Shown piece after piece: positions 254-63,095 of a DNA stretch of 64,000 nucleotides. Position 1 is the first letter of the stretch. Every line of letters begins with the position of its first letter. The stretch comes from Laetmonice hystrix (lineage: Eukaryota). The notes beneath the pieces are model-generated. The model was not told the origin of the DNA. It did not search any database and worked only from the letters and a program-made list of their open reading frames with translations. The stretch covers positions 34,038,001-34,102,000 of the forward strand of contig OZ249436.1 in the NCBI GenBank assembly GCA_965235115.1, written 5' to 3'. Made by a program: the position numbers and the translations under genes.

Positions 254-1257
254 GAAGACCCTGCCATATTAGGGCACAAAGAAGTCCAGATAAATCTTCC
301 TGTAAGCTGAACCCAAGTAGGAATAAAAACAAGTTTAGGGAACAATAACTCAGGTTGGAAAATAGGAGCAATTGTCTCCTGGATAAAGACCAACAAGCAA
401 TTGAACCGCAGAGAGCATGGCTATTTGGAAGTGTCAGTTATGGCCCCAGAGAATCTCAGAAATGGAGAAGGAAATTGTTGAAGGTGTGAAAAGGAAGGTC
501 ACACTGCCAAGATTTCACGGGTCACTGGTTGCTCACTGCTCGGAGCTGAGTGTGCTCATCACCGTCAGCACCTCGAAAAAAGTGGGCTGGAAAAAGAAAA
601 AAACTTTGAAAAGACTGCATGCCTCACGGCTGATTATCCAAACTAGTCATTGTGACGGGGCCTTTAGGGCGCGCCGAGCCCCAGACAAACAAATAATACC
701 TGGGTGGACAATAGGAGCTGTTGAAACGGTGAAATATTAGCAGCGAAACAAGGCTGAGGAGGGCATGGGGGAGACAGGTACAGGGGTGAGAGAATTAAAC
801 CTTTCAGTTGACGTTATCCAGGGGTCAGAGGGGTTGGCCAAATAACAGTGGCCCGAGAAGGTGCCCAATGACTACCACTTGGACACAAATCTCTTGCTGC
901 AGTGGTCATCCTTTCTAGAGATAACGTCAGGTGTCAAGGACCAACAAGTACTTTGTGGAGCACTGACCGAGCCCACCTGGAGAGGGGTCTCCTGGTGTTG
1001 TGTAGCATACACAGCCTCCAGTCCCGTTGGGGGTCATTGAAATGTACACATTGTGGCGTGCTCAATAGGATCGAGAGTAGATCACCTCGGGTAGTGGCCA
1101 TTGTATGGAGACAACCTCGTGGTGGAGCTCACAATGAACAGATGCTGGCTGTGACAGGCACTATGTTCACACTGGGCAGGTCGAGGGTTAAATAAAACCA
1201 ACGCTATATGTGCGGTGGGGCCATGGCCTCCTGTTGCTGAGGGTGGGAAGAGTCTGA
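254..1257 (+). pseudogene. Intron-less run of degenerate RCC1-like repeats with stops and frame changes
   Basis: Manual translation: 254-367 EDPAILGHKEVQINLPVS*TQVGIKTSLGNNNSGWKIG (cf. L.G..VVQI...T..G.V.SWG.N.SGQLG); 415-558 AWLFGSVSYG...KGRSHCQDFTGHWLLTARS*VCS; end of ORF 902-1195 VVAIVW...GGAHNEQMLAVTGTMFTLGRS (cf. GG.HS.ALT..G.VFTWGR); 1201-1257 YVRWGHGLLLLRVGRV*. By-eye consensus match only. Confidence 0.45.
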
Positions 1258-3667
1258 ATGTAAGGTCAATCGTTTAACATCGCCCTCCGTCAAACGTACC
1301 TTATTACAGGTTAGGGGTTGGTGCCTTGGTAGCTTGTGGTATCCATCAGCTTGGAGCCATACCCGGTACCACAAGTCCAATTCTTTTATCCGTGCATTTT
1401 CTTTGTATGCATCTTTTTCTTAAACCTAGCAGCTATTATTTAAGAAAACCCTTCAAGCAGACGTGTCGGTTCCTAGAAAACAATAGCAGGGGAAAACATG
1501 TTACAGTCAGCCCAACCATTCTGACGGCCAAGTTGTACAGGCATAATTTAACTACTTATGTTTTTGCATTGAGTCAAGCTAAATAACTTTGCTCCGAGGC
1601 CTTGCTGTAGGCCGTGGTATACCTTGCCTCCGGTGACAGTTTGTCAAGGGTTGCCGCCAGTCGCAGTCGCCTTGACAACGGCATGCAATAGACATGTGCA
1701 ACATCACTAAGGTTTGAGGCTTGGGGAGATGAAGATGGCTGTGCTTCTCTGGAAGTTCTGAGGAAGCTACATCGGCAGCAAGTCATTTATTGATCTTGAG
1801 ATGTAAGGCAGAAATGGCTTACATCAAGCGGATGGTTTGGGGACGGGATGGGGCCTCCGAGTCCCATAAGGAGAGCTCATCGGCCATATGATATTGCATG
1901 AGCCTTGGTGCAACCAACTGGCAAGCCACTTACATGCTTGATCAAGTTAAGGTAGTTTGAGGCTTCCAAATTGAGAAAAATGATTGGTGTGGAAAAAAGG
2001 AAGAAAGGTTCATGGAGGCTGTCAGTATGGCAAAGGAGGTCCGGAGGGGTCGGCATGGCATGAACTCTGGCCAGTATCATCACCCCTGTCTTGTCAGGTC
2101 GGCACCCACTCATAAAAGGGCCACGCCTGCTTTGAGGAAAAAAGCTCCATCTCAAAGCGAAAACTATCGGTTAGATCAAATTGAGGGGTCATTGGGGCCT
2201 GAACTTTGTGCGGTGTCATTGCCCACCAATTTTGTTAAACCAGTTATTGAGTCCCAGGGGTAGGCAGGGTTCAAAGGCACTGAAATAAAAGGTCCGGCAG
2301 GGTGCGAGATTGGCGCTCACGATAAGTCTGCAGGGTCAAAACTGTTCAATGGGAGGGACAGTCCTGGTCAATTTGGGGTCGTCAGGGTCGGAACCTTTGT
2401 GCCCCGCGGAGCCACAAGGTTGAGACCGCAGCTTAAACTCGTGCTGGATTTTGAGGGTCAAGGGTTGTGAATGTGAAAGAAAAAAAGAAAAGATAAATGA
2501 TGTACAATTTAGGGGTTTGAGGACATGGCATTGAAAGGTGTCGGTGTGGGAGGAGGTAATGATGAGGATGAACCACCGGGAGCAGTGGGCCGGGGCCCCC
2601 GTGTCGGCGGGACCTGTCTGCGGGCAGTGGACAACACTACACCTATTATTGTCGGTACGGCCAAGGGATGCAGGTGTGTAAATAGAGGACGGTGAGAACG
2701 GCGGATGAGTGATGCTCCTGGTGACAGCCCCCGCCAGGATGGCCCCGCTTCACCGGACCGAGCGGAAGATAGCAGCCACGGCAGCCTCTGGGCCTCTTCC
2801 CTGGAGAAACGCTTTTCATAAGTCCTCTCCCCAGGCATGCTCCTCTTCGTCTTTCTCCTGTCCGCTCACCAAATCTACTGGAGAAGGGAATCCTTAGGTC
2901 AGATGAGCTTCCCCGAGGGAACATATCGGCGCCTACTATTATTTCTAATTGATAATATTTAAACTGACGGTCCTGAAGACACCTTGCAATGCGTTCTGAT
3001 CCGTAGTAAATTGGCTAAAAGCTAAAAAAAAATAAAGTGGCCACTGTAAAGTGCAGCATGCCTATTTAAGGTTGTTTCATGGATAAAAATCTAAAATTTG
3101 GGGAAACCGCTGAAGACAATTTCAGGCCTATATAGGAAGATTACTGCGGCTGCAAAATGAAGTAACAATTCTAGTCTCCCAGGATTTATAAGCGTGTCCA
3201 TAAAGCAGACAGACTTTTGATGAACTATCACTGTCATGTTCCTGCCACAATCATATTTCTGCTTGAAGACATCCAATAAGTGCTCCAGTGCCAGCCCGCC
3301 AAACCACAATTGTAAAAGTAGTTTGGGTCGGTGATGACGAATAAAATAGTTTTACAACCCTTAATTTTACCGAGGACAAACTACTAAATCAAAACTCGAC
3401 GACAAATTCGCCAAGGTCAGATTTGACACAGAAAAAATGTTTCTTGAGACTGAAGAATGTTGAATTTGTGAATCAGATGTTTTCAGCCATCCTTTGTTTG
3501 CAGCGGCATTATTCGCGTGATTGATTGTTGAACTTTGTCCTAACCCTGAAGTGAAAATTATACACCAGTTGCGTTAAAGATACCCATGTCAAGATACTGA
3601 TTTATAATAAATGGTCCAGAGAATCCTCCACGTAACTTACCATTGTGTATTTGTTTTCGTATTTCAG

Positions 3668-3710
3668 AAAACGACACTCTTTACACCTGGAGAAATGAAA
3701 ACAGTGAACA
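3668..3710 (+). pseudogene. 43-nt RCC1-like (pseudo)exon
   Basis: Acceptor ttgttttcgtatttcAG| and donor |GTAAGT. Reads (E)NDTLYTWRNENSE(Q), cf. G.LYTWG.N..GQ, with Gly codon GGA seen as AGA. Confidence 0.45.
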
Positions 3711-4131
3711 GTAAGTATTCCAGAATTTCTTCTCTCGTTTTTCATATATTGTTCCTAAATAAAAACATAGTAGGCCTATAATCATGTGCACTAGTATTGA
3801 GGGATTCCAGAAAAATGTTTTTCGTGCCAATGGGAATAATTGGCGTTGGTGTGTCGTACTTGATGTAACATTTAAAGCCATTCACGATTATCTCTTAGTT
3901 CAATGACTCCAAAATGAAGACATGGACTATGTTAGATAGTGCTTTAGACTACATAAATCAATAAATGTATACTCACAGAAATGGAGATATCTAATGAAAT
4001 TCAACATTCCACTTGTCTATTGTCGCTATGAAGCGATCGTCTTATGGCTGCATGGTGCCAAAATCGTTGACCTGGCATTGACTTGAATAGCCAATGGAAT
4101 CTATTGGTTGATCGCCCGATACAGATATAAG

Positions 4132-4149
4132 CAACAACAACAACAACAA
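4132..4149 (+). repeat. (CAA)6 microsatellite
   Basis: caacaacaacaacaacaa read directly. Confidence 0.9.
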
Positions 4150-5881: not shown

Positions 5882-6307
5882 CAACAAATTCTCACCAGAT
5901 CTGTGTTAAGGGAGCACGAACTTATAATTCAGGTCGATTAGAGTTTATTTGACTGGCTGGTGACGGTCATCTGCAGATAATGACTTGGGAGGTCAGCTTA
6001 GGGGCATTAAGCATTCGTTGGCCTGCTTGATCTGGGCAAGGGGCGCGGGCTCCAGTGTCGATTAGCAGTGACTTACGGTCAGCCGAGTCGCTAGCAGGAA
6101 ATTACAGGAAATATAAGCATGATAGAACGTGGGCCGCGATTGGCAGGTCACGGACAGCTTGCATCTTGTCCATGTCAGAGGGGCCGACACCAGGGCCAAG
6201 AGGTCGATCACCGACCCTCACGGCCAGGGGATATGTTATCAGTTAGCAATTATTTCCACCTGACCATGCCTCATTGGATAACCTGCACGCAGCATTCATC
6301 ACTATGA
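5882..6307 (+). pseudogene. Degenerate RCC1-like repeats (about 2 blades, frameshifted)
   Basis: LREHELIIQVD* (5882 frame), AGDGHLQIMTWE then ggt cag ctt agg (GQL[R]) at 5991, and in ORF 6119-6307 GHGQLAS...WITCTQHSSL. Confidence 0.35.
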
Positions 6308-7391
6308 CACAATGAAATGACCATTTCTTACTGCTATAGATCTGATGCTGCAGTCATGCTAATTATAGGAATCATTAAGAGGTGGGGTTTTTCATATAAA
6401 TTTGGTTTTGCGTAGAGAAAGCATGGTTTGGTTGTGTGTGGTTGGTGTGGAGGGTCAGGGTCAGGTCGGCTACTTGCTGGTGGTGTTGGCAATGGGCACG
6501 TAACCTTGTGGTGCCAATGACCTCCAGCCACGTCATGTAATACAAGCGGGCTTTAATGTAAGAGAAAAAAGGCAGGCCACGGTTGATACGATTATGATCA
6601 AGTTCATAGGCAAATATCCCACTAAATATCCTAAATAACAATGGTTTTCTTCCTACAAAAATGTCTGAGCATACAATAAGTAGGCTTGGGTATTTTAAAA
6701 AGAAAACATCATTATTTTAGTATTAGTATATTTTAATATTAGTATATTTACACCAAGCGGTGTTTCCAAGGTAATCATGAATCTCAAATACCATCCGAAG
6801 GTGCAGCTATAATCAAATCACATCAAATTTAATATCACATCAAATTTTGAGACGGTAATGATGATATTTGGTAGCTGCTTCGACTTTCAAGTGAACCTAA
6901 CCTAATATAACCTTTGACACCTTTAATCACTCCATGCAGAATCTTACTTCAGTGTGTGGATTTTAATGTGACTAAAAATGAGGTCTTTATGGCCTGCAGT
7001 TGGCAAATGGAGAATATATAGCGGTCGCTTTGGCAGACGTACGGTACTTGAGTTTGTTGAGCGTTTTATTTTCTCCTGACCAGTTGAAAGCTGAGCGGTG
7101 TTGACCATTGTGCTAGGTGATGTATGGTTTGTTAATTGCATTTCGGGTGCCAGGGTTTGGCGATCATCTGCTGACCATTGTAGCCGGTCTGATCCTATTT
7201 CACACCCGCTTTGCCTATATAAACAGTACGGCTGCCGGACACGGCTCACTCTGGGCCGACCTCTTGCATTGACTGTAATGAGGCGGCAATGGTAATCAGC
7301 TATGATGTCATCGACAGTAATGGCGATCTGCCGGGGCTAGCAACACTTGATCCTAGCTTCAAGTTTGCCACTGAATGATGAGTCTGCGTGG

Positions 7392-7589
7392 TCAGTGGCG
7401 CCCCCGCCCCGGGTCTCCGGACAGCTGGCCGGAGATGACCGATGTCCAAGCTGACCAGCAGCGATCGGATGACAACCCTGACAGCTGCCGCCCAAATTGA
7501 TATTGTGTTACGATTGAGGTGGTAAGAAAAGCTGCTGTTGGTCGGTTGCGGTCAGTAATTGGGACGGGTCCCCAATTGGCCGCACACAC
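7392..7589 (-). pseudogene. Possible RCC1-like fragment, minus strand
   Basis: ORF track SDRCWSAWTSVISGQLSGD has W.....GQL at RCC1 spacing. Weak on its own. Confidence 0.25.
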
Positions 7590-8778
7590 GACGGTGGTTG
7601 ATCGGGGAAGGACTTGCTGTAATTAGTGCTGGCCTGGGCAGTGGTTAGTGTGAGGTCCTCAGGGTGTGGCCACTTACCTGGTCGCCCCAGGCCATGGCCG
7701 CTAACCCAGGGGATGACCGGCGGTCAGCGGTCAGTTTACTGATATCAGAGGGCGAGTCGCCGCAGAGAAGGAGGTGGTCAGGAGGAGGGGAGGGGATTCT
7801 CATCACCTCCTCCAGGGCAGCCCACCTGTTCACTGGACTGTGCTCCTGTAGGGAGGGACGTCGCCTGCAGGGGCTGAGAGTCAAGTAGATGATCTACCCA
7901 CAGACACCACCAAGGTGGCCTTGACCTTCTGGCCTTAAGGTCGTGACCTTATGTCAATTACTTTGGTTCAGGAGGAGCGTCATGAGACGCTGGTAATAAG
8001 TAAGCTGAGATGTCCAGGGGTCGCAAGATGAGCCAGTAATCATATAAAATAGATACATACAGCTGGTACATGCATTTTCATCTCAAAATTTTCTGGCTTC
8101 TGTTATGACATCGATAATCGTTTAATTCCTTAAACCGCATACTCGCCATAAAAATTGCGACCTAAATACCATAGTGCTGATGATTTGATATTAAAGTTCA
8201 TCTGTGAGTGTTTATTTTCTTCTTATGTCTGCTGGATAATTTACATAAATAATACCCGTAGCATCACACGTTTCATTTACCTGGTAAACTAAGCAATTAT
8301 TATCTGACCAGATAACATTAATTTTGTTGACAAATCCTACTACTGTTGATGAGGATCATGACACTACTGATAAAATTGAACCAGTCGGTAAATGAGTTAT
8401 GCCCCCCAAAAAACCAACCTCGCAGTAATTCGACCGTAGTTAGTCCTGTGTTAATATTAGTTCGGCCCAGAGGGCTGGGCCGAAGCTTCGTACAAATTTG
8501 GGGCCTTTTGAAATCCTTTTTAATTTCCTTTTTAATCAGAAGGCAGACTTAAGTAGAGGGATCCCATCACTAAACACCGGGGCCAAGCACGTCCACCGAT
8601 CACGCCCTAATCCATGATGAACTTTGAAACGCAAACATGATAAAAGATGAGGCCACATTTTTAATCGCGGGCAAGGTGGCCGTGGCCGGAAGGGTCATGA
8701 CCCGATGTCAATTACACGACCGAGCGCTCGCGGTCCCAACTGCCCAATCACAAGTGCGGCGCATCAATATCACCAATT

Positions 8779-9051
8779 TCATGTAACATGACCCAAAAAC
8801 GCGCACTTTGATTTAGTGCGTTTTTCAGTTTTGCCCACGAGTCGGTGCGCAGATAAATTCGGTGTGATTTGAAGGTCACGACCCAGTTGACATTGATGAG
8901 AGTGGTCAGTGATGATTGGCTGGACGCCGGGCTGCATGATGTAAGGTGAGCCAAGACAAGCACAAGGCCCTGCACACATCAAAAACGGGAGGCCCGGACA
9001 AATTAAGCTATTTAATAATGGAGATGAGTGACCCTGCCGACCCACATACAT
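8779..9051 (-). pseudogene. Possible RCC1-like fragment, minus strand
   Basis: ORF track DHSHQCQLGRDLQITPNLSAHRLVGK, cf. N.HGQLGR.....P..V..L.GK. Confidence 0.3.
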
Positions 9052-12000: not shown

Positions 12001-12149
12001 GTAAGGTTGGGGGTAGGGAAACGTGAGCAGTGATCACAAGGTGTAAGTTGATGGTCGCCCCATCCTGATTTCATCTGCACCTCGTTAGGGTAGGAAATTA
12101 ATTTCTTGGGCGGTGTATGCAGCCATTATGATAGACATGGTGGAGGTTT

Positions 12150-12392
12150 ATGGCCATGGATGGGGTGTGTCGAGGCCCTGGTTTCCACCGCCAAGACTCC
12201 CCATTGGTAGCGAGCCTGTCTCAGACCGCGACCATGGGAACCGTCGCTGTGAGATATGTGCACCAGTTGATGGGTTTGATAAATAAGGGTTATTTCATAA
12301 CCATTGAGGCGGAGCAAATATCATTCACAATTCCTCAGCTCAGCCATCCTTTTGGCATTCCGACAGCGACTTGTATCAGTGAGAGAAATTAA
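12150..12392 (+). pseudogene. RCC1-like fragment
   Basis: PLVASLSQTATMGTVAVRYVHQLMGLINKGYFIT, cf. P..V..L....V..VA.G..H..AL...G.VYT. Confidence 0.4.
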
Positions 12393-12994
12393 ATGCTGCA
12401 CTGCAGAGTTGGACTCGGATATATAAGGTCATCGTTTGAAGCAGCTATACATGTTCGTTTTAAATTGAAAGTGAATGTATTTAGCAGCCTTTATAACATT
12501 CCATCGTTCACAGACCTTTTGTGGGGTATTATATATATTTTGATGGGCAACCTTTCGGGTAGAATAGCTACGGTATTCAGCGGTAAAGGATAATGGCACC
12601 TTACCCATGAGTTTGATCCCTCACTAGGCTCTTGATCAGGATCTGATCCCTGATCCTTTGCACGGCCCCATGGTTTTTGTTTGCTCTGACTTGGCCTGAA
12701 AGTTTGCTGATGGAATAGATGTAAGATTAAAACCAAACAGCGGGTTTACTGTCGAGGTTGCGTGTGGGGGCCGATAGTGTCGGCTGAGGGGCGAGTTTTG
12801 ACGGATGAGCAGGACAGCGGGGGTTGTAAGTTGGGATGACCCTCTCGCGCCACCCTCACCCCGGAGTCCCGGCACAATGGGGTAGTTATCAGTGCCGCTG
12901 CTCCACCTCCTGAACCCTCGCCCTGCGCCCGCCCGATAAGACCATTGTTTGGCAGGAGTCCATGCCACAAGTCACTGGTCTTTGATTCCCACAA

Positions 12995-13297
12995 ATGAAA
13001 GTCAGGACCTTTGGTCTGGCCTGTTATGGGAGCGGGATTGGGTCATGGTACGCTAAGACCGGGGCCATAGACCTCGGACAGCGCCAGCGTAATAACCTAT
13101 ACACCTTGGTGGCTCGATACGGCATATCGGCGGCCAGTGTCAGGATCCGTGCCCCACAGGGTCGCGACACTAATATCCAGCTCTGGCTATCGGGGTCCCG
13201 CTATGTTAGGGGGCCAGGGCAGGGGGCTCGACCCCCCATTACCCCTGCAGAAATATGGCAAATAAAGCCGTGGCCCTTGGGCCAGCAGTGCATATGA
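12995..13297 (+). pseudogene. RCC1-like fragment
   Basis: KVRTFGLACYGSGIG (cf. GKVYTFG...YGQLG) and NNLYTLVARYG (cf. G.LYTWG...YG). Confidence 0.4.
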
Positions 13298-18712: not shown

Positions 18713-18979
18713 GTGGTCCGTCGGGGGCAGGGCAGGGGGCAGGTCAGAATCACAATAGGGCATCGTTACGTGGCCGCCGGAGTAATGATATCTGCCGTCA
18801 CATATGGCAGGTTGTTGGGGGTGAAGGGGAGATGTCAAGAAGGTCCAAGAGGCGGGCATGGCCTGGTAACCTGGCCGGTTCAACTAGGGCCCTGCCCCTC
18901 CCTGCCCCCTGCCCCTCAACTGCCCTTCCTCGGCCTGCCCCCACCCTGGGGACAGCGGGGCTCTGACCAGGTTCTCTGA
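18713..18979 (+). pseudogene. RCC1-like fragment
   Basis: RYVAAGVMISAVTYGRLLGVKG, cf. VAAG..HS.ALT..G.LY.WG. Confidence 0.4.
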
Positions 18980-19222
18980 GGGTCATTAGGCAAAGATCGA
19001 AGCCCTGGCACTCGGTTGGATCATTGCCCGCAACAGCGATGATCGAAATTTCCGCGTATTTACAGTGGGCTGCACTCGGTGTGAGATAAGAGACAAGGAT
19101 CAAGTGGGTCGGTCAACATCCCTGGCTTCATGTATCAGGGGTCCACTGTAGGGGTTGGCAGGGTTCTGACCGGACTGACCCAAACACCCCACTCCCTCTA
19201 ACACCCCACACCGGCCGCATCG

Positions 19223-19262
19223 CCCCCCCCCCACCCCCGCCCCCGCCCCCGCCCCCGCCCCC
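19223..19262 (-). repeat. (GGGGGC)5 plus G-run, canonical G-quadruplex motif on the minus strand
   Basis: + strand reads ccccccccccacccccgcccccgcccccgcccccgccccc. Confidence 0.75.
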
Positions 19263-20584: not shown

Positions 20585-20891
20585 GCAGTTGCCTGCATTG
20601 GGGAGTTGCCTGCATTGGGGAGTTGCCTGCATTGGGGAGTTGCCTGCATTGGGCAGTTGCCTGCATTGGGGAGTTGCCTGCATTGGGCAGTTGCCTGCAT
20701 TGGGCAGTTGCCTGCATTGGGCAGTTGCCTGCATTGGGCAGTTGCCTGCATTGGGCAGTTGCCTGCATTGGGCAGTTGCCTGCATTGGGGAGTTGCCTGC
20801 ATTGGGCAGTTGCCTGCATTGGGCAGTTGCCTGCATTGGGCAGTTGCCTGCATTGGGCAGTTGCCTGCATTGGGCAGTTGCCTGCATTGGG
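20585..20891. repeat. 17-bp minisatellite, about 18 copies, unit AGTTGCCTGCATTGGG(C/G)
   Basis: Read directly. Near-perfect array with one C/G variable position. Explains the overlapping repetitive ORFs at 20511-21098. Confidence 0.97.
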
Positions 20892-23800
20892 TATACTCGT
20901 ACATGTAGAATTGCCACTATAGTTTCCAAGCAAACCCGGCTGCTGGCATTATTGCTCGCCATTCACCTCGCACCTGACCTACTTGTAAGTTGGCCTTGTA
21001 GTCATTCCCTTATGGAAACGTACATTGTTGTACGAAATAACCAAAGGCACCGTGGAAGTATGTCATTAATTTCGACAGAAGACTTTGTTGTGGTATAACA
21101 CTCGTCAAACCACACCTGGAAAATATGAACACCCCCCACGTCCGTTTGGTTACAAGATTGGTTGCACATAATGCGTCACTGTTTTCAGGAAATTAATCTA
21201 AGTCTGCGGTGAGGATGTGGGGACCATTTCTTATGCATGACGTCGCCAAAAGTAGACAAGACGCGTCCTAATTAGACCTCTGTCCAAGGTAAATGGTTGG
21301 GTAAGAGAGCAGTAAAGGTAGAAGCACGAAGTTTGTCACCAGCCGTGGTGACCTGGACGTGTCCCCATTCTCCACTTGTTTCCTGGACATTACGACATGG
21401 ACGTCTCTATACAGAAGCGTGCCCCCCACGACAGCTTCCCAAGGGTGACGTCGGCCGCATTCAGACTTCACTTCCACACCAAGAAGCTTCATGAATAAGC
21501 GCATAGATAGAACGTCGGCAGAGGAATGGCAGGCCGGGCAGGTTTAGCGAGGGTCAGTGGGGAGGTTGCGTTGGTGGCAGGCTGGGGGCTTAGTGGAGTC
21601 AGAAGGCAATGCCGTCGGATGTCACCCTCAGCCCTTACCAATCTGGTTAGACCACTCGCGGCCGTGACAGCAGGCAAAAGTTCATGAATACAGGCACACT
21701 TTGGTGTCAGAGGGCCTTGGTATCACAGACATTTAATCCCAACAAGGTGGCTGGGATCCACTGGTTTTAGACTGCAGGCCACAAAGGCTGCTGACATGAG
21801 CGCCCTACAATCTGGTTACCACGGTTTCAGGCCTCACACTATCAAAGTTCATGCATTGCTTGCAAGCCTGGCAAGTCTGGAGGTCAGGCGAGGTCGACGT
21901 GAATTTACATAACAGAAGCAATCCGCACATTGATTCCTTATTGGAAAGATAACAAAAATGGGCTGGAGGCCAGGCTGGATTGTAAAGAACTGAGCATGGA
22001 TTTCGCCGGTTTTGGCTCAGGACTGTTTCAAATTGGATCCAGAATTAGCTGACAAAATGGGATCATGTCCACCGCTATCAGAACCTGGTCTTCCTTGCAG
22101 CCGGTCAGACGTAAGCCGTGGGATTGGTCCAGAATTCAAAAAGGCCATGTTATGATGGAACCGAAGGGTCTCCGTATATACACAGTCAGCCTTTGGTCTC
22201 AGACTTTTCACAGTTTTCAGTTTCTCTTTCTTTTATGTATTCATACCATCGGTAATCAGAATGTAATTGTGACAATGAATTTTGAACTGTACACTACGGA
22301 ATGAATTCTGTTTAGAATTTCATGTAGAAAATGTTTTATCTCCAGATTATAGTGTCAATGTGACAGATACGGTATCCTGTCACATCACGTCTATATTATA
22401 GTTATTTTCATGAACAGGCTAAGCATACGTTTAAGACATCGAATGAAAATATATGCATTAGAAAATGTTTAATAATGACTTTAGTGGTTTTCTCTGACGC
22501 ATTTAACATGGATCTCATACAGCAAGGCAGCGTTTAGACCTTTGTATTACTGCATTACGTGAACTTCGAGATGTAAATATTTATGTACAATATAACATAG
22601 TTGGTACGATGTCAGGACGTTGAAGTATCTTGTTGCTCCTATGCATTCAACAGAGTGACAAAATAAAAAGAGAAACCTCGCACTAACCAATACATGTTGT
22701 TAATATAATTATATTATTCAGTGCTTAGAAAGGGCTTGACAAAAAGGTCAGTGAGAAAATCTGAGCATGAAAAATGTTTTCTGAATATGTGTCCATTACA
22801 TTTTTGTTCGAATGTCACATAGTGTGAAGGTGAGTGACTAAATGGCTGCTAAATGACATAATGCAACTGTCGGATCATTTCAGTGCTTTCTGTTGTTGTG
22901 AATTTCTAGTTGAGTGCTTCCCCCTTTACATCTCATTCCATCCCCGTGAGTGGCATGATTACATTAGGTGTACAAGGGGTTGTGCTCATTGCCATAAAGC
23001 TCTACCATCAGATTACACTCTATGACCTAATGGCAGGACTCATTGCTTTGTTCGCTCATTACCCAGTCCGTGGTCAGAGGATTTAGATAAGGTAAGCCAC
23101 TGAAGCCATCAGGCTTGATCTCTGAGATCGTCTTGCACCATAAAACGAATACACTTTGTAATGGGCTTACAGCCTCCCCAACAGAGTATAAATGGAACGA
23201 CCAGTATAGTGAGAGATGCCAAGCAAAAGTCACGCTAACAAATGACGCCTTTGAAATATGGGCAGAGAAGGATAAGTGTAGAGTCGGGGAAGGGAAAGTT
23301 CAAGAAGATAAAAGTGTTAGTCACTCGAATCCGTGGCATCTGACATGTACGTCTTGGTGCCTGGTGGATATAATGGCAGTGGACATTCCAATTAGGACTT
23401 CATCCCGCCCTCAGTTAGCAGGGACGGAGTTTCGAAACTGATACCTTCACACCACAAACTGTGAACGTGATTTGTCATCAGGGTTATTAGCAGTGAGAAA
23501 AACAGAAACGGTGAGAAAGACGGCATGGTCTGGCTCAAGTAAATTCGACTCAAGTTTAAAACTTTTATGTATTTATTACTGTCGTCATATTTTGTATATT
23601 GGGGTTCTGGAGACGTGAAGTTAGGAAGTTTTTAAACTTGACTTGTAGGTCTCCACAAGGGTGAACTGGTCACATCGTGGGGTCAGGCAGTCAGCCCCGT
23701 GAGGAGTTGGGGTTGGGGAGAGGGCAGAAAGGGGGTGGACCCCCCAGACCATGCCGGCTTTGGGGCAAGGGGTTAATGCTACCCGTGGTGGTGGGTTCAT

Positions 23801-32441: not shown

Positions 32442-32732
32442 TTGCTGCTGCTGGTTGTAATGACACGGTGGAGGGGATACTGGGCTAGGGCTAGCTGGAA
32501 TGGATGGTTGTCGCTGTCAGATGGTCATCACTCAGTGATGGATGCCTCTACAATTGTCCATCTTGCCCATGTTGCGTGTGGAGGCTATAAATCAAGGGAT
32601 CTATCTGCCTGGAACCCTCAGGGTCAGCCGTATAGTACTACAACTAGTACTACAGCATCTGCATCTACAACTAAAGCCATATGTCTGATTCTGCCCGCAC
32701 AGAATTTCCAGTACAGGCCTCGGTATGGTTGA
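32442..32732 (+). pseudogene. RCC1-like repeat fragment
   Basis: GYWARASWNGWLSLSDG...STIVHLAHVACGGYKSRDLSAWNPQGQ: W....G.L.L.D, VACGG..S and L.AW...GQ occur in RCC1 order. Confidence 0.55.
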
Positions 32733-32978
32733 CCCCTCCACTTCGGTGGTATCATCATTCCTATCATGGTCATGATATTCAAAAAGTATTTATTGAGTTC
32801 AGAGGTTTTCTAAATAAAACGACTCCGTGTCTTGATTACTTTACTTAATCAAGCTAGAAGTTCCATGATTGAAGTGAAATATTATATTTAGTCCTTTTGT
32901 CCTGAGTTCAAAGAAGACCTCGATCGGGTACAAATAGCAGTCCTCTGTCAAGGCCAGGGGCCTGGGGCTAGATGGCAA

Positions 32979-33167
32979 GTGTTGGCAGATTCACCTTCGT
33001 TTTTTACCACTTGGCTTGCCAGTTGGTTTGGTATCTGTGCCAAGCTGGTTGAAAAGATATATTACCTTTTAACACCCTATTTTCATTCAAAGGACACTCT
33101 TTTAGAGGTAGCCGCAGTGACGGGCAGGCACGTGTTTACCTGGGGGGATTTGTGTTTAAAAGCGTAG
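32979..33167 (+). pseudogene. RCC1-like repeat fragment
   Basis: TPYFHSKDTLLEVAAVTGRHVFTWGD contains the exact VFTWG motif preceded by EVAA. Confidence 0.5.
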
Positions 33168-42464: not shown

Positions 42465-42683
42465 GTTGGGCAGTGGGGAGGCGGTGAGCCGGTGGTCAGC
42501 CAGCAATGTCCAGCTGTTCGCGGGACCAGCCTCCCGGACTCCCCGGCCTGCCCTGGCCGAGTCCGACTGTGGAGAGAGGCATACCTTCGCCTGGCTCACC
42601 AATGGTCTCGTATTGAGTTTGGGAAACCATGCTCAACTCGGTTATACTTTGTCTTCAACATTGAGAACTACAAGGAAAATGAG
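42465..42683 (+). CDS. Candidate 219-nt open exon encoding one divergent RCC1 repeat (RCC1/HERC-type propeller blade)
   Basis: Acceptor gtgtttctctgcAG|, weak donor GAG|GTAGTT. Open frame LGSGEAVSRWSASNVQLFAG...DCGERHTFAWLTNGLVLSLGNHAQLG with CG..HT.A....G.V...G...QLG at RCC1 spacing. Confidence 0.6.
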
Positions 42684-46489: not shown

Positions 46490-46663
46490 CAGGCCCGTAA
46501 TTTCCATCAAATTATTGAGGGGGCTACTGAATTATTGAGGGGGCTCGACGAACAGATCCAAGGTTCTCCCTAGTACAGTAGGATAATTATTAGGCAACAC
46601 TGAAAATATTGGGGGGGGGGGCTTCAGCCCCCTAGCCCCCCCCCCCCCTGAATTACGGCCCTG
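46490..46663. mobile_element. MITE (174 bp), CAG...CTG termini, 5-bp TSD TATAA
   Basis: Left end CAGGCCCGTAATT, right end AATTACGGCCCTG (12/13 inverted match). TATAA at 46485-46489 and 46664-46668. Internal 15-bp duplication ATTATTGAGGGGGCT and G/C runs. Confidence 0.9.
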
Positions 46664-50292: not shown

Positions 50293-50712
50293 TCAGAGGC
50301 TGGTGTTAGAATAGTGAAAAGTTATGGGTGGTAATTTTTCCCATGAGTTGTTTGTTTGCAAGTTTTCCTGCCCTTGCTGACCTGCGAATTGTGTGAGGCA
50401 TGTGACATGGGGGTTGGCTTTCCTAATGGCCACAACTCCTGGTGGTATAGCGGCCGTGGACACAAGAGCTGCATCCTTTAACACAACGCCTGATGAGGTA
50501 ATTATAGGCCAAGGCCAATAGGCTCCAGTCAGTCCTGATCCCTGACACAGACTCTGATGGGTTAACAATAGGGAAAACTGGGGGCTAATACAGGGGTGTG
50601 GCCACACCCGGTACATGGGCCCCATCGTCAGCGGATCCAGCTTGTAGTGCAAAAGCACTGACCCATCCTTACTGGCATTACCAGTATGCGGCAAACCACA
50701 CAGTGTACACAC
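50293..50712 (-). pseudogene. 139-aa ORF with partial RCC1-like repeats, minus strand
   Basis: CGLPHTGNASKDGSV has CG..HT.....DG.V at exact RCC1 spacing. Also SPQFSLLLTHQSLCQGSG, ITSSGVV and VVAIRKANPHVTCLT. Confidence 0.55.
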
Positions 50713-51605
50713 AACCGAGAGTTTATGATCCCAAGCCTGACCAGGCTAGGGCCTGTCATCAAGCTGGCTAGCAGCAGCTTCAAAGGGCACGTAAGCCACC
50801 CTAAGTGTAGCCGATAGAGCTAATAACACCAGACCACGTGCCCCTCCGTGACCCACCATTTAGCTCCTCACTGTTGGCTGCCTCTAATCTTAACCTCCTA
50901 GGTGGCACTTTGGCAGCCCAAGCGCTGGTCGTTGACCACTGGAGGCTATGTGTCAAACTGGGGAGGCGTGGGTTACGCACCGACCGCCTCATTGCGTTTC
51001 TGTCGGTAAATAACACCGACTAGTGCGGCAGGCCCCTATACTCCTCGACACCTACCTCTCCGGGGGTAGGTCGACCCCGGCGGCCGGTGTAAACTTGATG
51101 AAAACTCGGAGTCGCAAGCACTGAGTGCCAAGAGACGAGGAGACCCCTCCTTGGGGGTAATCTCGGTGTACTCTGCTGTCAGTCAGGAGGAGCAGCTCGG
51201 AATAAACGCAAACAGCAGCTCAGGGCGAAGAAACACAAACCCGCCGCTGTTCCAGCTTCTCAGTCTGTGGTTTAAGTCGGCATGAAGTTCTCGTGGCAGT
51301 TTTTCGGGGGAAGGGATTCAGTTTTTTGGTGTTTAGATAATGCACAGACATAAAAGGATTCATTGATCAGGTAGAGAAGTGCTCCGAAGAATTTCCAAGA
51401 TTTCAAAGTTTAGAGATGTCTGAGAGGATTCGTTTCTTTTACCTACCACAAGTTTGGATGGAGTCTGAGACGAGCGGTGCCAGCTGTAGACAAGATGGAG
51501 TCAGCGGCAAGGATAAGACACCTGACACCTTTCCTTCTACACAATCTTTATCCGCAATTGTAGCTCGAATAAATGCACCTCGACTTTTCTTTTTATCTCT
51601 CTCAG

Positions 51606-52904: not shown

Positions 52905-52980
52905 GGGTCCGCAGCAGGGGACAGGTCAGAACCTCTGACCCTGAAAGACCAACACGGCCGCTGGTTCGAATCCGATCCGA
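52905..52980 (+). other. Degenerate tRNA-like or SINE-head relic (not a functional tRNA)
   Basis: Perfect B-box GGTTCGAATCC at 52963-52973 and D-loop-like GGTCAGAAC upstream. Anticodon and T stems do not pair properly. Confidence 0.25.
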
Positions 52981-54314
52981 GACGTCTGTGGCCAACTGCA
53001 TTAAACTGTAGCTCATGTTTTCACAATGTTAGCACAAAGCTGACCAGGACCAGCTGGCCTTGATGGCGCAGCACTGCGGGGGTTGGCGACCAGTGGTATT
53101 GGCCAAACACCGAGTACAATCAGGACCGTTTCCAGATTAGCAACACGAGCCGATAGCTTCAGTGGAAACACTTACCTTTTCTTATTGTTCACAAAGACGA
53201 TCGTTTTCGAAGGACTGTGGAGAGATGAATTGTACAGAAATCAACTGTCGCTAAGGTTACTGATTAAGGAAACTTTGCAACTCAATACGAGATGGAAAGA
53301 TACCATAACAATGATTTCTCAGTCCATTTTACTGCATTCAAACGTGTCCTTTGAATGTTGCAGCATTATGCTGATGCAGAGGTCATTATCTGGGCCTTTA
53401 TCACTGCACGTTTCATTTCTCAGAAATAGCAAGAATGGTGGAGCGCACTCCAGCATTCTTGGAAATAGTTCTCGCTGAAACCATGGCTCTAATAAGGCTT
53501 CAGCGAGAAGTCTAACGAGTTAATCCGGTAACCCAGGCAGAAAGTTAGTGTTGCAAATGAAAACCCAGCGAATTTCTAAGTTCATTCCCGGGTCTTCTCA
53601 TCGGAGTGGCCACTGATTCCATGAAGCCAGTATTGGTACGTTATGAGGACCTTAAAGTAAGACCCGCGCAGTAGTCCAGTTTCTGTCCCATGGTGGGTCA
53701 AATGGAACATTTCTATATCCCAGAGGATGGTGTCTATCGGGAGTGTCATCGGTGCACAGGGAGCATAGGGAGGGCTGTGGTTGTGGTCAGTGTGTCTGGC
53801 CGGGTGGCCGGCCGAGGTCGTCCCTGTATAATGAACGGGTGACGGAGGGCATGGCCCGGCCTGATACCTCGGCCCCTGGGTCCCGGGCCGGGCCACCGTA
53901 TGCGGTACGGGATCGGAGGCCCGTCACCTGTCACCGGGCAGCACTGTACGTGAATATGTAACAATTCCCACAGGGATCCCTACTCAACTCACTGCTAATA
54001 CAGCACAAGGGTGACTAGAGCAAAGTATAATACATATGTTGATTGAACCTTGAATTAAAGATGTGGAGAGTACCATTCCTATTGTGGTCTGAATTTGAGT
54101 ATATTCAGTTTGGGGTTTTATGTTGATTGCTGATTACATGGTTCAAAGAAGATTGAGATTGCACTTGTAATAGCAATGGACGTTAGATTGGCCTTTCTAC
54201 TGCCAACCCGTGGTTAAGGTGACATTATGTGTTAAATGTTGTATGCCTTAATTGTTGATGACTGGATAACTGTAGAAATATTGAGCACTCCTATAATGTT
54301 GTTTTTTGTTACAG

Positions 54315-54424
54315 ATGCAGCCCCACCTCTTGAAGACATGAAATTACCGCCCTGTCACTGAGGTGGCCTGTTGGGAGACGCACACACTTCTTTTGTTCCA
54401 GGACGGAGTCTTGGCAGCAATGGG
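54315..54424 (+). pseudogene. 110-nt RCC1-repeat exon with one in-frame TGA
   Basis: Acceptor gttgttttttgttacAG|, donor GG|GTAGGT. Reads MQPHLLKT*NYRPVTEVACWETHTLLLFQDGVLAAMG, matching P..L..L....V..VACG..HTL.L..DG....G except TGA at 54339-54341 and G>W (TGG). Confidence 0.7.
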
Positions 54425-57400
54425 GTAGGTTGACAAATCAAATGTAACGTCTTAGATTGTCTACAATTCTCCACACCCCGAAGTGAAGTCTGACAACCCT
54501 TATTTCCGGTGTTTTAAGTCGCTGGTTTGGATCCGTTGTGCTATATATAGGTTAATCTAGCTGATCAATAAAAGAGTTTCTCAGATCTATACACAACATT
54601 ATCCCATTACTAGTGCCGTACTCGGCATGCCTTTTGTTCTGAAAGGTCAGTTGAAAGGTCAGATATGGGAACTTAGATGTCTTTGACTAGAGACTGTGTA
54701 TGGAATCCATGAACGACATAGACGTCAGAACCTCAACAGTCAGGTTTCTTTAAGTTGGGTGGGGTGACGGGAGCTACTGATCCTTTCTCTCTCTAAAATT
54801 ATCCATCTCCCACCGGAAGGTTGCTTCTAATCTATTGTTGAAAGGAACGTTTCTTATATGATCACAGCAGACCTCTGAACTTCCCAGGGCATATTGTTAT
54901 GATCCTATGTGTTCACCCGGGAAGGCTGACTGTGTATGTGCCCATCGTGGCTGTGTGATGTGCACCCTTACTGAAGCAATTTGCGTCATTTTGACTCCAA
55001 AGTGCCATCTCATATTCATGTAGAGCAGGCCTATTTGGTATTAAGTTGACACAGCACGTCGCTCTTCAGTGCCATCGCTCAGGTGTACTGAGCCCAGTGA
55101 GAAAGGCCCCTGAGCCAGGTAATCTTGGCACACACCTGCTTTTGATGTACAACATGGCATGTCAGCCGTTAAGGCCCGGAAGCTGCTAACCTCTCATCTG
55201 TTAAAGCTCAGCGATGACTGTATAAGATCTAGTCGCGGTGCCACTGTCATCCAGTGATGCTCCCACACCTAACATCCCATCGACCCGACCCCCGTCCCTC
55301 CCTCCGCCAGTTTTGACATCCCCCCTTGACTGACTCCCCCCCCTCCCCTCCCTCCTCCTCCAACCCCACCGCAGTTTCCCGTCCATTCCAATCCCGGGCC
55401 CCAAGGGCGGTGTAATCCTGACACGGGCGGGTTGTTAGGGAACAAGCCAGGTACTGATAGACGATCATCCAGGTGTCCATTGACAGGTGAGGGTTGTCAT
55501 CCCACCTCATCCCCAAGTTGACCGTACGAATGGTGATGAGCGGCACGCTACCGCCGGCGGCCTGTTTGGTATGCCGGCCGGCGGGGGGTAGGAGGCCGAC
55601 ATGATCGCTGCCTGATCATGGGGATCGGGAGACTGACAGGTGGGGACGACCGACACTGGGGCCAGCAGTCGTCCCGGTTAAACCCTCCCTGTCACAACAC
55701 CGGCCATACATCATACAGCCGTGTCACATATCAGCAGCACGCCCACCGCATCATCAGCATCAGTCGGGATCTCAAAAACCATGGTTTGAAAGTTCAAATT
55801 AAGCACACAAAACATTGCTATTCTGGAATTATTGAAGAGTAATGCATAGAATATGTGCCTGAATATCGTAGCAGAACAGAGTGTCCCTTTATGAATCAGG
55901 GACCACACTGAACAGGTCCACCGTGGAATAAATCGAGTGTAATACAAAGGTACAAGTGCAGATCGAGAGTTTGACTTATCAAGTGGTGTGTGATTCATTT
56001 CATGGTCGTAGTGTCGCGTGTCGCGGCCATTGTGTGGCAAGGAGACTCAGGAATAAATCGTAAAAAGGAGATGATACAGCAGTCATACATGCAGCCGATG
56101 GTTTGGTATTGTTCTGATGATGTGATGACCTGACGATGTGACTTTTTGTGAGGTCGTGTAACTTCACACCATAACGTGACCATCAGAATCGTCTTTCCTT
56201 CTGTTTATCGTCATCGCAGCATCCGTCTTAGGTAACCGACGCACCAACGCTGCCTTTGCACTTTGTGAAATTTTATAAAATTCCAGAATAAAGCAGGGAC
56301 ACGTTATCCGCAGTGAGCTGAAGAAGTGCGAGAAACAGTAGTAAATTGATCCACCTTGTGTGATGTGCACCTTTTCCTATGAACATGACAATGGTATGTA
56401 TATATGATGACATATAATGAGTTGGGAGACAAAGGCGTTATGTGATTCCTGAAGACCGAGATTGAGTTTCTTTGACGGCATAATGTGTTCTACCAAAGTT
56501 TCAAAGTTTCGCTGAGAAAAAACGGACGTTACAGAGAAAATAGAACCCAGAAAAGCACCTTCGCCGCCAGGTGTAGTATCGTCGTTTTAGTCTGCCTGAT
56601 AAACTGTCTATATCCGCAGTGTCGGTGGGGATAAGGGATTCTAAGAATAATGTCGCAAAATGTACATTACTAGCATATGTGTAGTATCTGTAGTACGGTG
56701 GCCCAAAAGTACAAAACCATCACGTTGACTCAAAAACACCTCGACACAGCGACCTGAAACACTTGTGTGTGAATCTAGTTTGTCGGGGTGTTTATTCATG
56801 TGTGATCTATAATCATTTGCTTTCAAGTGTTTGCTTCAACTGGCAGCCCAGCAGGTAATGATAGCGTGTTTTTGGATTCTTATAGGCTTCAGTGTGTCAA
56901 AGATAGTTTTCACTTTTCAAAAAGATAGCGATTACCCGTAAATGTTTCATTTTGACGTTTGAAAATGTTCATTCATATTCTTTTCTTGTGTTGCATGTTA
57001 GACGCGAAAGGGGTAATGTAGCTGCCGTTAAATAAGGGTTGCATTTGAGAAAATATACAACTAATGATACATAATAAAAGAGCGAAACACGCAGAATTAC
57101 AAACCGGAACCATCAGTAATTCTTTTTAGGATGACTGAGCATTTCATGAAAGGAAGTAGCGTATTAAATAGCATTCAGGATGCCAAAGGTCAACCAAGCC
57201 CAAAATAATCTACAGTGTATCTATATTGTAAGCTGGTTTTAAAGTAGGTTGAAGGGGTTTTACGTTCAGCAGAGTGAAATGTTTGTGAGTAAGAGTCCTA
57301 AGTTCTCAGTCGCGGTAGAAAAAAATCCAAGGTGAATAAATTATAGTATGGCCAGCCTCGCCTTGTGGAATCACACTTCATGAGTCGAAAAGATCAAGTC

Positions 57401-61319: not shown

Positions 61320-61519
61320 TGTTACGCGCCATCGGTCGATCTGACCCATCGGCCGATGGGTCAGACCCATCGGTGGATCGGCCAACGGGTCGCCCATCGA
61401 CCGATGGGCGACCCATCGGTGGATGCGCAGCGCGCGCTAGGGTCGCGGCCCATCGGCCGATGGGTCGCGGCCCATCGGCCGATGGGCCTGACCCATCGGT
61501 GGATGGGTGGTTGGTAAAC
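61320..61519 (+). repeat. Left arm built from CCATCGGCCGATGG palindromic subrepeats
   Basis: Contains the 26-bp perfect palindrome TCTGACCCATCGGCCGATGGGTCAGA and multiple variants. Confidence 0.95.
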
Positions 61520-61610
61520 CAGGAGACATGAAATGACATGAAAACCTAGAGGAGACAACCTCTCAACCCGAGCCGCAGGCTTCCTTCAGTCAAGAACTCA
61601 GATCCCCCAG

Positions 61611-62435
61611 CCACCTCCGCCCCAGACCACCAAGCCACCTCTTGCCCAGACACGACACCCACCTCCTGTCCAGACCCCACACCCACCTCCTGTCCAGACC
61701 CCACACCCACCTCCTTGGCAGACCCCACACCCACCTCCTATCCAGACACGACACCCACCTCCTGCCCAGACCCCACACCCACCTCCTGCCAGACCCCACA
61801 CCCACCTCCTGTCCAAACCCCACACCCACCTCCTATCCAGACCCCACACCCACCTCCTGTCCAGACCCCACACCCACCTCCTGTCCAGACCTCACACCCA
61901 CCTCCTGTCCAGACCCCACACCCACCTCCTATCCAGACCCCACACCCACCTCCTGTCAAGCCTCACACCCACCTCCTGTCCAGACCCCACACCCACCTCC
62001 TGTCCAGACCCCACACCTACCTCCTGTCCAGGCTCCACACCCACCTCCTGTCCAGGCTCCACACCCACCTCCTGTCCAGACCTCACACCCACCTCCTGTC
62101 CAGACCTCACACCCACCTCCTGTCCAGACCCCACACCCACCTCCTATCCAGACCCCACACCCACTTCCTGTCCAGCCTCACACCCACCTCCTGTCCAGAC
62201 CCCACACCCACCTCCTGTCCAGACCCCACACCCACCTCCTGTCCAGGCTCCACACCCACCTCCTGTCCAGACCTCACACCCACCTCCTGTCCAGACCCCA
62301 CACCCACCTCCTGTCCAGGCTCCACACCCACCTCCTGTCCAGACCTCACACCCACCTCCTGTCCAGACCCCACACCCACCTCCTGTCCAGGCTCCACACC
62401 CACCTCCTGTCCAGACCTCACACCCACCTCCTGTC
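61611..62435. repeat. 24-bp minisatellite, about 34 copies, unit CCAGACCCCACACCCACCTCCTGT
   Basis: Read directly. Variants CCTC/GCTC and two 23-bp units. Stop-free, hence the 283-aa and 241-aa repetitive ORFs. Confidence 0.97.
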
Positions 62436-62625
62436 ATTAAATCGGTCACCATTGTTGCCATGTTTGATTACCCCCGGATTTACCCGCTGTTAACACTACT
62501 TAACATTTTCACACACATTTCAAGTTCTGTTAAAGTTTTTAAAGTTAGGGTGCCTACGTCTAAACGTTTTTTTCTTCATGATAACTACAGTATAGTCCGT
62601 TTTATGTATTGCATCCATGTGTTCT

Positions 62626-62801
62626 GTTTACCAACCACCCATCCACCGATGGGTCAGACCCATCGGCCGATGGGCCGCGACCCTGGCGCGCCGCGCATCC
62701 ACCGATGGGTCGCCCATCGGTCGATGGGCGACCCGTTGGCCGATCCACTGATGGGTCTGACCCATCGGCCGATGGGTCAGATCGACCGATGGCGCGTAAC
62801 A
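62626..62801 (-). repeat. Right arm (inverted copy of 61320-61519)
   Basis: Reverse complement aligns to the left arm by eye along its full length. Confidence 0.95.
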
Positions 62802-62991
62802 TCATCATTACTGATACAGATGTATTAAGTAAGACAGTATCTGATGCTGCTCCTGTTCCGAAGTAATGAAGCTATATATCTTAAGTTGGAAGCTGAAATT
62901 ACAGCTTAAACCTACAATCTATAATGGTGTATCTAAACCGATTCTCAGTACTGCCCTCGCGGTTCTATCTTAGTATTTCATTCACATTTAG

Positions 62992-63095
62992 GGCATATTA
63001 TATGCATACTGATTTGGCTTTTTGGCCTTCTGGCAACTGAAGAGGAGTCTGCAGAGAAAGAATCTTGATGACAAGCTATGCATCAAAACTTTCAA
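62992..63095 (+). pseudogene. 104-nt RCC1-like exon with one in-frame TGA
   Basis: Acceptor atttcattcacatttAG|, donor |GTAAGT. Reads GILYAY*FGFLAFWQLKRSLQRKNLDDKLCIKTF, cf. G.LYAWG.N..GQLGR. TGA at 63010-63012. Confidence 0.5.

What the first reader, a model, noticed from the sequence alone, without database searches (positions are those of the whole stretch)
254..63095. Window-wide field of degenerate RCC1-repeat fragments
Fragments matching the RCC1 blade consensus recur from the first to the last kilobase. Several have exact motif spacing: VACW..HTLLL..DG at 54363, CG..HT.A....G.V at about 42567, CG..HT.....DG.V at 50700 (-), VFTWG at about 33137, KV.TFG...YG at about 12998 and VACGG..S at about 32570. 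A normal RCC1/HERC domain has about 7 blades, yet there appear to be more than 20 fragments here and none forms an intact gene. The weaker matches could be pattern over-reading. The five or six strongest are unlikely to be chance by a rough codon-probability estimate.
Basis: partly seen in the sequence, partly recalled or inferred. Interest (0 to 1): 0.85.

Follow-up and report, generated by a model that had tools for sequence, protein, structure and literature searches.

The report
Decayed RCC1-like gene, not a field
Three of the claimed fragments are real leftover exons of one broken RCC1-like gene with very long introns, and all the other "RCC1 fragments" are chance matches, so this is an ordinary pseudogene and not an unusual repeat field.

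Summary
Partly confirmed. The window is 64 kb of a 627 Mb animal genome (G000:C1:34038001-34102000).

**No field of fragments**
- Pfam RCC1, RCC1_2 and WD40_RLD scans of the whole genome give no match in the window.
- Generic RCC1 blade profiles score the six-frame translation no higher than dinucleotide shuffles.

**Two real relics**
- A family profile scores them 46.6 and 30.7 bits. The best of 40 shuffles scored 8.7.
- They are consecutive exons (3 and 4), with splice sites and phases as in the Pinctada orthologue.
- A 43-nt exon 2 lies at 3668-3710, with the same length and phase as in Pinctada.

**The gene is broken**
- Exon 3 carries a frameshift, which Logan contigs of three runs of one sample confirm as free of indels.
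- Exon 4 carries an in-frame TGA where every homologue has Leu.
- Four conserved Gly residues are replaced.
- No exon 1 or exons 5-12 were detected.
- No intact orthologue was found elsewhere in the genome.

**The rest is noise**

One contig suggests the relic is still spliced. The scan had already noted splice-flanked RCC1 exons on this same stretch (s1-317233).

The parts
3668..3710 (+). Relic exon 2 (43 nt). Its 13 whole codons read NDTLYTWRNENSE, against the family's ..I..WGNGNSG. All three conserved Gly residues are replaced (R, E, E).
   Evidence: The acceptor is tttcgtatttcag| and the donor |gtaagt. Length (43 nt) and phases match Pinctada exon 2, L041 6107-6149. It is the only AG..43 nt..GT candidate in the window reaching its PSSM score. 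None of 100 shuffles has one. Sequence alone is weak: 1.3 bits with the family HMM.
42465..42683 (+). Relic exon 3 (219 nt). It reads LGSG...CGERHTFAWLTNGLVLSLGN--HAQLGY, then shifts frame at 42646-42647, then reads FVFNIENYKENE.
   Evidence: phmmer gives 53 RLD proteins at E <= 1e-3, with single-stretch 61-residue matches to mollusc and annelid proteins. tblastn gives E down to 3e-12. The family HMM gives 46.6 bits. The acceptor is tttctctgcag| and the donor |gtagtt. Logan contigs of three runs of one sample carry no indel here.
54315..54424 (+). Relic exon 4 (110 nt). It reads MQPHLLKT*NYRPVTEVACWETHTLLLFQDGVLAAMG. An in-frame TGA lies at 54339-54341, and Gly is replaced by Trp in the VACG motif.
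   Evidence: tblastn gives 60% identity to Nucella P0021 158-195, E 2e-9. The family HMM gives 30.7 bits. Length is the same as Pinctada exon 4, 110 nt. The acceptor is ttttttgttacag| and the donor |gtaggt. It joins exon 3 exactly as in homologues (NYKENQ|MQPQLL).
23508..23538 (+). Possible alternative upstream exon end, joined to the exon-3 acceptor in one contig of run X4.
   Evidence: The 28-nt loose end of a 151-nt contig lying on 42462-42584 maps here with 1 mismatch. No such match occurred in 100 shuffles. The site is followed by GTAAAT. This rests on a single contig from a run of unknown library type.
50296..50745 (-). Chance match (CGLPHT.....DGSV). It is not part of the relic.
   Evidence: It has no RCC1 Pfam hit and scores -6.8 bits in the blade PSSM. 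It lies on the wrong strand and is absent from the phmmer ranking. The opposite strand at the same site reads CGKPHS.
32442..33164 (+). Chance matches VACGG (32571) and VFTWG (33132). They are not part of the relic.
   Evidence: The family HMM gives -1.8 bits or no hit. There is no RCC1 Pfam hit. Both are absent from the phmmer ranking. They are out of order for exons of this gene.
12986..13294 (+). Chance match KVRTFG...YG. It is not part of the relic.
   Evidence: There is no RCC1 Pfam hit. It gets no score with the generic or family profiles.

Best explanation
The + strand of the window carries the remains of one gene. It is the local orthologue of an uncharacterised RCC1-like-domain (RLD) protein of about 900-1000 residues, conserved across animals.

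Exons 2, 3 and 4 are still recognisable at 3668-3710, 42465-42683 and 54315-54424. They keep their order, splice sites and intron phases. The introns are 38.8 and 11.6 kb.

The reading frame is destroyed in three ways. Exon 3 has a frameshift. Exon 4 has a TGA where every homologue has Leu. Four structural glycines of the blade motifs are replaced. The other exons are not detectable.

[quoted passage not shown] It is a pseudogene, apparently unitary, since no intact copy was found in the genome. It may still be transcribed and spliced.

Shown: homology, exon structure, the disabling changes, and the absence of other hits. Inferred: loss of function, unitary status, and transcription.
For: Homology of the two main pieces:
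- phmmer of exon 3 against 1.84 billion proteins gives 53 RLD hits, with colinear 61-residue matches to Mytilus, Pinctada, Sinanodonta, Nucella, Pomacea and Owenia proteins.
- tblastn finds exactly two colinear HSP sites, corresponding to adjacent protein segments.
- The family HMM gives 46.6 and 30.7 bits. The best of 40 shuffles is 8.7.
- Generic RCC1 HMMs give these pieces only 3.0 and 8.0 bits, so the match is family-specific.

Exon structure:
- Lengths and phases of exons 2 and 4 are identical to Pinctada. That gene spans 60 kb.
- The exon 2 candidate is unique in the window. None of 100 shuffles has one.
- 32 of 43 family-invariant residues are kept and 11 are lost.
- Exon 3 has no indel in contigs of three runs.

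No intact copy elsewhere:
- Genome-wide searches with Pinctada P0047 and with the family profile find no better locus.
- The invariant WGNGNSGQ motif has no exact match in the genome.

The rest of the window:
- A phmmer ranking of all window pieces against 192 RLD proteins singles out only these two pieces.
Against: - Only three of about twelve exons are found. Exon 2 is not significant by sequence alone (1.3 bits).
- The flanks of the window could not be fetched. Missing exons may lie outside, and the gene could be larger than seen.
- The TGA in exon 4 was not checked against reads.
- The contigs that confirm exon 3 come from the same sample as the assembly.
- The genome searches score only the best candidates, so a divergent intact paralogue cannot be fully excluded.
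Confidence: 0.8

Rival explanations
1. This is a live, functional gene. The frameshift and stop would be assembly or haplotype artefacts, or the protein would be read in some other way.
For: Splice sites of all three exons are intact and consensus-like. About three quarters of the invariant residues are kept. One contig suggests splicing at the exon-3 acceptor.
Against: - The exon 3 frameshift is present without indels in contigs of three runs, including one carrying the alternate allele at 42550 (G>C).
- The TGA replaces a Leu that is invariant in the family.
- Gly is replaced by Arg, Glu, Glu and Trp at core blade positions.
- Exons 5-8, which are as conserved as exons 3-4 in the family, are not found in the window or by genome-wide profile search.
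- With only 12 splice-site bases, finding all of them intact is expected about a quarter of the time at this level of decay (rough estimate).
Confidence: 0.07
2. The window would carry a field or cassette array of more than 20 degenerate RCC1 blade fragments, more than one gene can explain.
For: There is a slight excess of weak generic hits on the + strand: 4 hits of 7.5 bits or more against 0.63 expected, with 1 of 150 shuffles reaching that. Two [VI]FTWG pentapeptides occur.
Against: - One of those four hits is the real exon 4.
- Overall density equals that of shuffles.
- There are no Pfam hits in the window.
- The family HMM finds nothing else above 3.5 bits, which is the mean best score of shuffles.
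- The phmmer ranking shows no further piece.
- The + strand bias follows amino-acid composition.
Confidence: 0.03
3. This is a duplicated fragment (non-unitary pseudogene) of an RLD gene whose intact parent lies elsewhere in the same genome.
For: The genome searches score only the best first-look candidates. A weak hit to the exon-8 region lies 149 kb downstream on the same strand.
Against: - The window's exons are the most similar sequences in the genome to Pinctada P0047 (50% and 49% identity, against 26-53% for the other hits, and at most 39% among those scoring higher).
- Each relic exon finds only itself in the genome.
- None of the 20 other fetched RCC1 stretches matches the family profile across its blades in order (at most 54 bits, one segment), and each scores higher with the generic blade model, which was built from those same loci.
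Confidence: 0.08

Closest known systems
Uncharacterised metazoan RLD protein family. Examples: Pinctada imbricata KAK3097505 (875 aa), Mytilus trossulus LOC134714911, Crassostrea virginica LOC111129310, Owenia fusiformis CAH1796404. Automatic names include 'UVR8-like', 'RPGR-like' and 'HERC2-like'.
   Same: The exon 3 and 4 relics are about 40-60% identical to these proteins. They carry family-specific motifs such as RHTxxWLxNG, AQLGY, NYKEN and YRPVxQVxCG. Exon boundaries, lengths (43 and 110 nt) and phases match Pinctada.
   Different: The reading frame is broken and only exons 2-4 are recognisable. The family members are intact proteins of 760-1090 aa with a complete RLD. The function of the family is unknown.
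Canonical RCC1/HERC RCC1-like domains (Pfam PF00415, PF13540, PF25390). These are seven repeats forming a seven-bladed propeller (PMC9998523 abstract).
   Same: The blade consensus elements CG..HT, DG and QLG occur with the canonical spacing.
   Different: The relic pieces do not reach any Pfam threshold. The best is WD40_RLD at 14.1 bits against a cut-off of 150. At most about three partial blades are present. The genome's genuine RCC1/HERC loci lie elsewhere.
Unitary pseudogenes: orthologues disabled in one lineage with no functional copy left. This concept is taken from my own knowledge.
   Same: The relic shows conserved exon-intron structure, disabling mutations, no intact copy detected in the genome, and possible residual transcription.
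   Different: Synteny with an intact orthologue and the date of loss could not be tested.

Membership tests
RCC1-like domain (Pfam RCC1 / RCC1_2 / WD40_RLD) | A match to the Pfam models at or above the gathering score | tested here: not met
   There is no window match in the genome scans. Of the six quoted pieces, only 42295-42684 gets WD40_RLD, at E 0.029 and 14.1 bits against a cut-off of 150.
RCC1-like domain (Pfam RCC1 / RCC1_2 / WD40_RLD) | Seven tandem blades able to form a propeller | tested here: not met
   Only exons 2-4 are found, covering profile positions about 74-196 of a 400-position RLD.
RCC1-like domain (Pfam RCC1 / RCC1_2 / WD40_RLD) | An open reading frame through the blades | tested here: not met
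   There is a frameshift at 42646-42647 and a TGA at 54339-54341.
Metazoan uncharacterised RLD family (Pinctada KAK3097505 and relatives), as a relic orthologue | Significant, family-specific sequence homology | tested here: met
   The family HMM gives 46.6 and 30.7 bits, against 3.0 and 8.0 with the generic blade HMM. The shuffle maximum is 8.7. phmmer E-values run down to 2e-22 when summed over blades. Single-stretch matches have E of about 1e-4 to 1e-6 in 1.84 billion proteins.
Metazoan uncharacterised RLD family (Pinctada KAK3097505 and relatives), as a relic orthologue | Conserved exon order, boundaries and phases | tested here: met
   Exons 2 and 4 have the same lengths (43 and 110 nt) and phases as in Pinctada L041. 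The exon 3/4 junction is as in the homologues. The exon 3 boundaries match the read-through ORFs of the P0039 cluster.
Metazoan uncharacterised RLD family (Pinctada KAK3097505 and relatives), as a relic orthologue | Conserved synteny with intact orthologues | not tested
   The flanks could not be fetched, and no annotated neighbour genes are available.
Unitary pseudogene | No intact copy elsewhere in the genome | tested here: inconclusive
   None was found with the protein, the profile or the invariant-motif pattern. The searches score only the best candidates.

The most novel reading that the evidence does not exclude
The relic is not inert. It would still be transcribed from an alternative upstream exon near 23.5 kb and spliced onto the old exon-3 acceptor. 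An ATG at 23525 is in frame with the family frame. On this reading, a pan-metazoan RLD gene of unknown function was lost in this lineage, and its splice-competent exons were recycled into a non-coding or short-ORF transcript.
Probability: 0.2. Interest if true: 0.35.

Novelty: new member of a known kind. Interest (0 to 1): 0.22.

Why it matters
This is mainly a calibration result.

A motif-reading pass can spot true relic exons. Its two top picks were real, even though Pfam scans of the genome missed them. The same pass over-called about tenfold, and it mistook one long-intron gene for a repeat field.

Biologically, the finding documents loss of an uncharacterised RLD gene in one lineage. The gene is otherwise kept from cnidarians to fishes. 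That adds a small data point on the dispensability of the family, and nothing more surprising than that.

Tried and rejected
- **hmmsearch on whole-frame translations with X at stops.** It reported almost no domains and was uninformative. I replaced it with stop-to-stop pieces.
- **Regex counts.** They gave 'significant' excesses, such as two CG..HT.....[DN]G.[VLI] against 0 in 200 shuffles. The pattern was written after seeing the hits. One of the two (50700-) proved unrelated, and part of the CG..H[TS] excess is one site read on both strands. I rejected this as evidence.
- **Ungapped 27-column blade PSSM.** It picked out the same two real sites and nothing else.
- **Weak family-HMM hits.** IWGCGCFRQKQ at 49813 (3.5 bits, out of order), 56733 and 57353 are within the shuffle range. 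I rejected them.
- **Isolated phmmer hits.** 33397-33522 and 24376-24435 are sums of sub-threshold repeats. I rejected them.
- **GC skew as a sign of a transcription unit.** The sign is uniform, but the size is ordinary for this genome. It is not used as evidence.
- **'Splice sites better kept than codons'.** There are only 12 splice-site bases, so this is not significant at this level of decay.
- **Naming the organism.** The best hits are unnamed ENA proteins. Relic identity is about 40-47% to molluscs, annelid, amphioxus and echinoderms alike.
- **RNA evidence.** No RNA runs are on record.
Full report
**Setting.** The window is G000:C1:34038001-34102000 of a 627 Mb, 35-contig eukaryotic genome. 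GC is 46% and CpG observed/expected is 0.60. It has no N runs, no tRNA or Rfam match and almost no long ORFs. The longest 'ORFs' are minisatellites read in several frames. The 150 longest non-repeat stop-to-stop pieces have no credible Pfam domain.

**Is the observation there?** All six quoted motifs are present at the stated places. Of those six pieces, Pfam gives an RCC1-type hit to only one. That is 42295-42684(+), matching WD40_RLD at E 0.029 and 14.1 bits, far below the cut-off.

**Is it more than chance as a field?** No.
- Six-frame scans of the whole genome with PF00415, PF13540 and PF25390 give 106, 78 and 91 matches. They cluster at about 17 ordinary RCC1/HERC-type loci, none of them in the window.
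- I built blade HMMs from 48 and 27 of the genome's own repeats and a two-blade tandem version. I scored all stop-to-stop pieces of the window against 40-60 dinucleotide shuffles.
- Counts match the shuffles. For the 50-column model, 20 pieces reach 4 bits against 14.1 +/- 3.4, and 1 reaches 8 bits against 0.57.
- Against 200 kb of real control DNA from the same genome, the window has somewhat more weak hits. Its own shuffles show the same excess.
- The weak hits are about 1.6 times commoner on the + strand. Its frames carry 17-20% more Gly, Val and Trp, which are residues the blade consensus is rich in. The background of weak motifs is a composition effect.

**Two outliers.**
- An ungapped 27-column blade PSSM scored 54360(+) at 16.4 bits and 42559(+) at 6.7 bits. 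Everything else scored below zero, and no shuffle of 100 reached 16.4.
- Both sites have splice-like borders.
- phmmer of window:42466-42684 against 1.84 billion representatives returned 53 proteins at E <= 1e-3. The ten scanned with Pfam are all RLD proteins.
- Several of these matches are single colinear stretches over query residues 1-62.
- The named ones are mollusc and annelid proteins of about 760-1090 aa without other domains: Mytilus, Pinctada, Sinanodonta, Nucella, Pomacea and Owenia.
- The family extends to nemerteans, amphioxus, hemichordates, echinoderms, a sea anemone and teleosts. Its names are uninformative or automatic.

**Anatomy.** Local tblastn with these proteins finds exactly two sites in the window, both on the + strand.
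- 42463-42645 continues, after a frame change, as FNIENYKENE up to a GT at 42684.
- 54312-54425 reads QMQPHLLKT*NYRPVTEVACWETHTLLLFQDGVLAAMG. It is 60% identical to Nucella P0021 158-195 (E 2e-9).
- In the homologues these two segments are adjacent (…NYKENQ|MQPQLL…).
- A profile of eight family members scores the pieces 46.6 and 30.7 bits. The best score in 40 shuffled windows averages 3.5 +/- 1.7, with a maximum of 8.7.
- The generic blade HMM gives the same pieces only 3.0 and 8.0 bits. That explains why Pfam missed them, and shows the match is family-specific.
- The Pinctada gene spans 60 kb in 12 exons.
- Pinctada exon 2 is 43 nt (…IFAWGNGNSGQ) and exon 4 is 110 nt.
- The window has a 43-nt exon at 3668-3710 (codons NDTLYTWRNENSE). 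It has a strong acceptor, a GTAAGT donor and identical phases. The split CA|G codon is completed by the first base of exon 3.
- By sequence alone exon 2 is weak. It is nevertheless the only AG-43 nt-GT candidate in the window reaching its score, against none in 100 shuffles.
- Final coordinates are exon 3 at 42465-42683 (219 nt) and exon 4 at 54315-54424 (110 nt). The introns are 38,754 and 11,631 nt.

**State of the gene.**
- Exon 3 is out of frame from 42646-42647 onward.
- Exon 4 has a TGA at 54339-54341 where all homologues have Leu.
- WGNGNSG has become WRNENSE, and VACG has become VACW.
- Of 43 family-invariant columns covered, 32 are kept and 11 lost.
- Logan contigs of three runs from one sample cover exon 3 without any indel. 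The contig of one run carries the alternate allele at 42550 (G>C), which lies inside exon 3.
- No exon 1 or exons 5-12 are detectable in the window.
- Genome-wide searches with Pinctada P0047 and with the family profile recover the two window exons. These are the genome's closest matches, at 50% and 49% identity. No other locus fits the family.
- Each relic exon finds only itself in the genome.
- The invariant WGNGNSGQ motif has no exact match anywhere in the genome. Near-matches occur at the control rate.
- One weak profile hit lies 149 kb downstream (E = 6) and could not be examined.
- I conclude that this is a decayed, probably unitary pseudogene.

**Possible residual expression.** Run X4 has a 151-nt contig that covers only 42462-42584 and carries 28 foreign letters before 42462. 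Those letters map to 23508-23535(+), just before GTAAAT. This looks like a splice from an alternative upstream exon onto the exon-3 acceptor. It is one contig from a run of unknown type, and no RNA runs are on record. I treat it as a lead only.

**The other claimed fragments.** Four fragments are at issue: 50700(-), 33137, 32570 and 12998.
- They get no RCC1 Pfam hit.
- They score nothing with the family profile.
- They do not appear when every window piece is ranked by phmmer against 192 RLD proteins. There the two real exons hit 168 and 125 proteins and nothing else stands out.
- They are also on the wrong strand or out of exon order.

**Comparison and verdict.** RCC1-like domains are seven repeats folding into a seven-bladed propeller (PMC9998523, abstract). 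The relic fails the membership tests for a domain: Pfam thresholds, seven blades and an open frame. It passes the tests for descent from one specific RLD family: specific homology and conserved exon structure.

Its 'field' interpretation is replaced by one ordinary long-intron pseudogene. I confirm that splice-flanked exon, but not an array.

Noticed in passing
window 46490-46663: This is a 175-bp interspersed repeat, SINE- or MITE-like. It has at least 780 first-look candidates genome-wide, and the 39 scored copies are 86-96% identical. It has no tRNA or Rfam match.
   Followed up: partly
window 61599-62435 (also 61440-61508): This is a 24-bp minisatellite with 35 copies. It creates the window's longest open frames in three frames (up to 428 aa, Pro/His/Thr-rich). 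These are not genes.
   Followed up: partly
window 20585-20891 and 40442-41094: These are minisatellites of 17 bp (18 copies) and 37 bp (17.6 copies). Both lie inside the 38.8-kb intron of the relic gene.
   Followed up: no
window 23508-23538 (+): This sequence is joined to the exon-3 acceptor in one contig of run X4. An ATG at 23525 is in frame with exon 3. It may be an alternative first exon of a residual transcript.
   Followed up: partly
G000:C1:34251363-34251434 (+), 149 kb past the window end: This is a weak family-profile hit (E = 6) to the exon-8 region, on the same strand. It may be a further relic exon or chance.
   Followed up: no
window 42550: A G>C difference appears in contigs of runs X2 and X4 but not in X1 or X3. 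It is probably a heterozygous site inside relic exon 3.
   Followed up: no
L041 (Pinctada imbricata VSWD01000007.1) 6150-23359: Residues 95-165 of the annotated protein P0047 (its exon 3) were not found by tblastn in the fetched locus. The tool also reports that the locus does not translate to the query. This may be an annotation or assembly inconsistency in that record.
   Followed up: no
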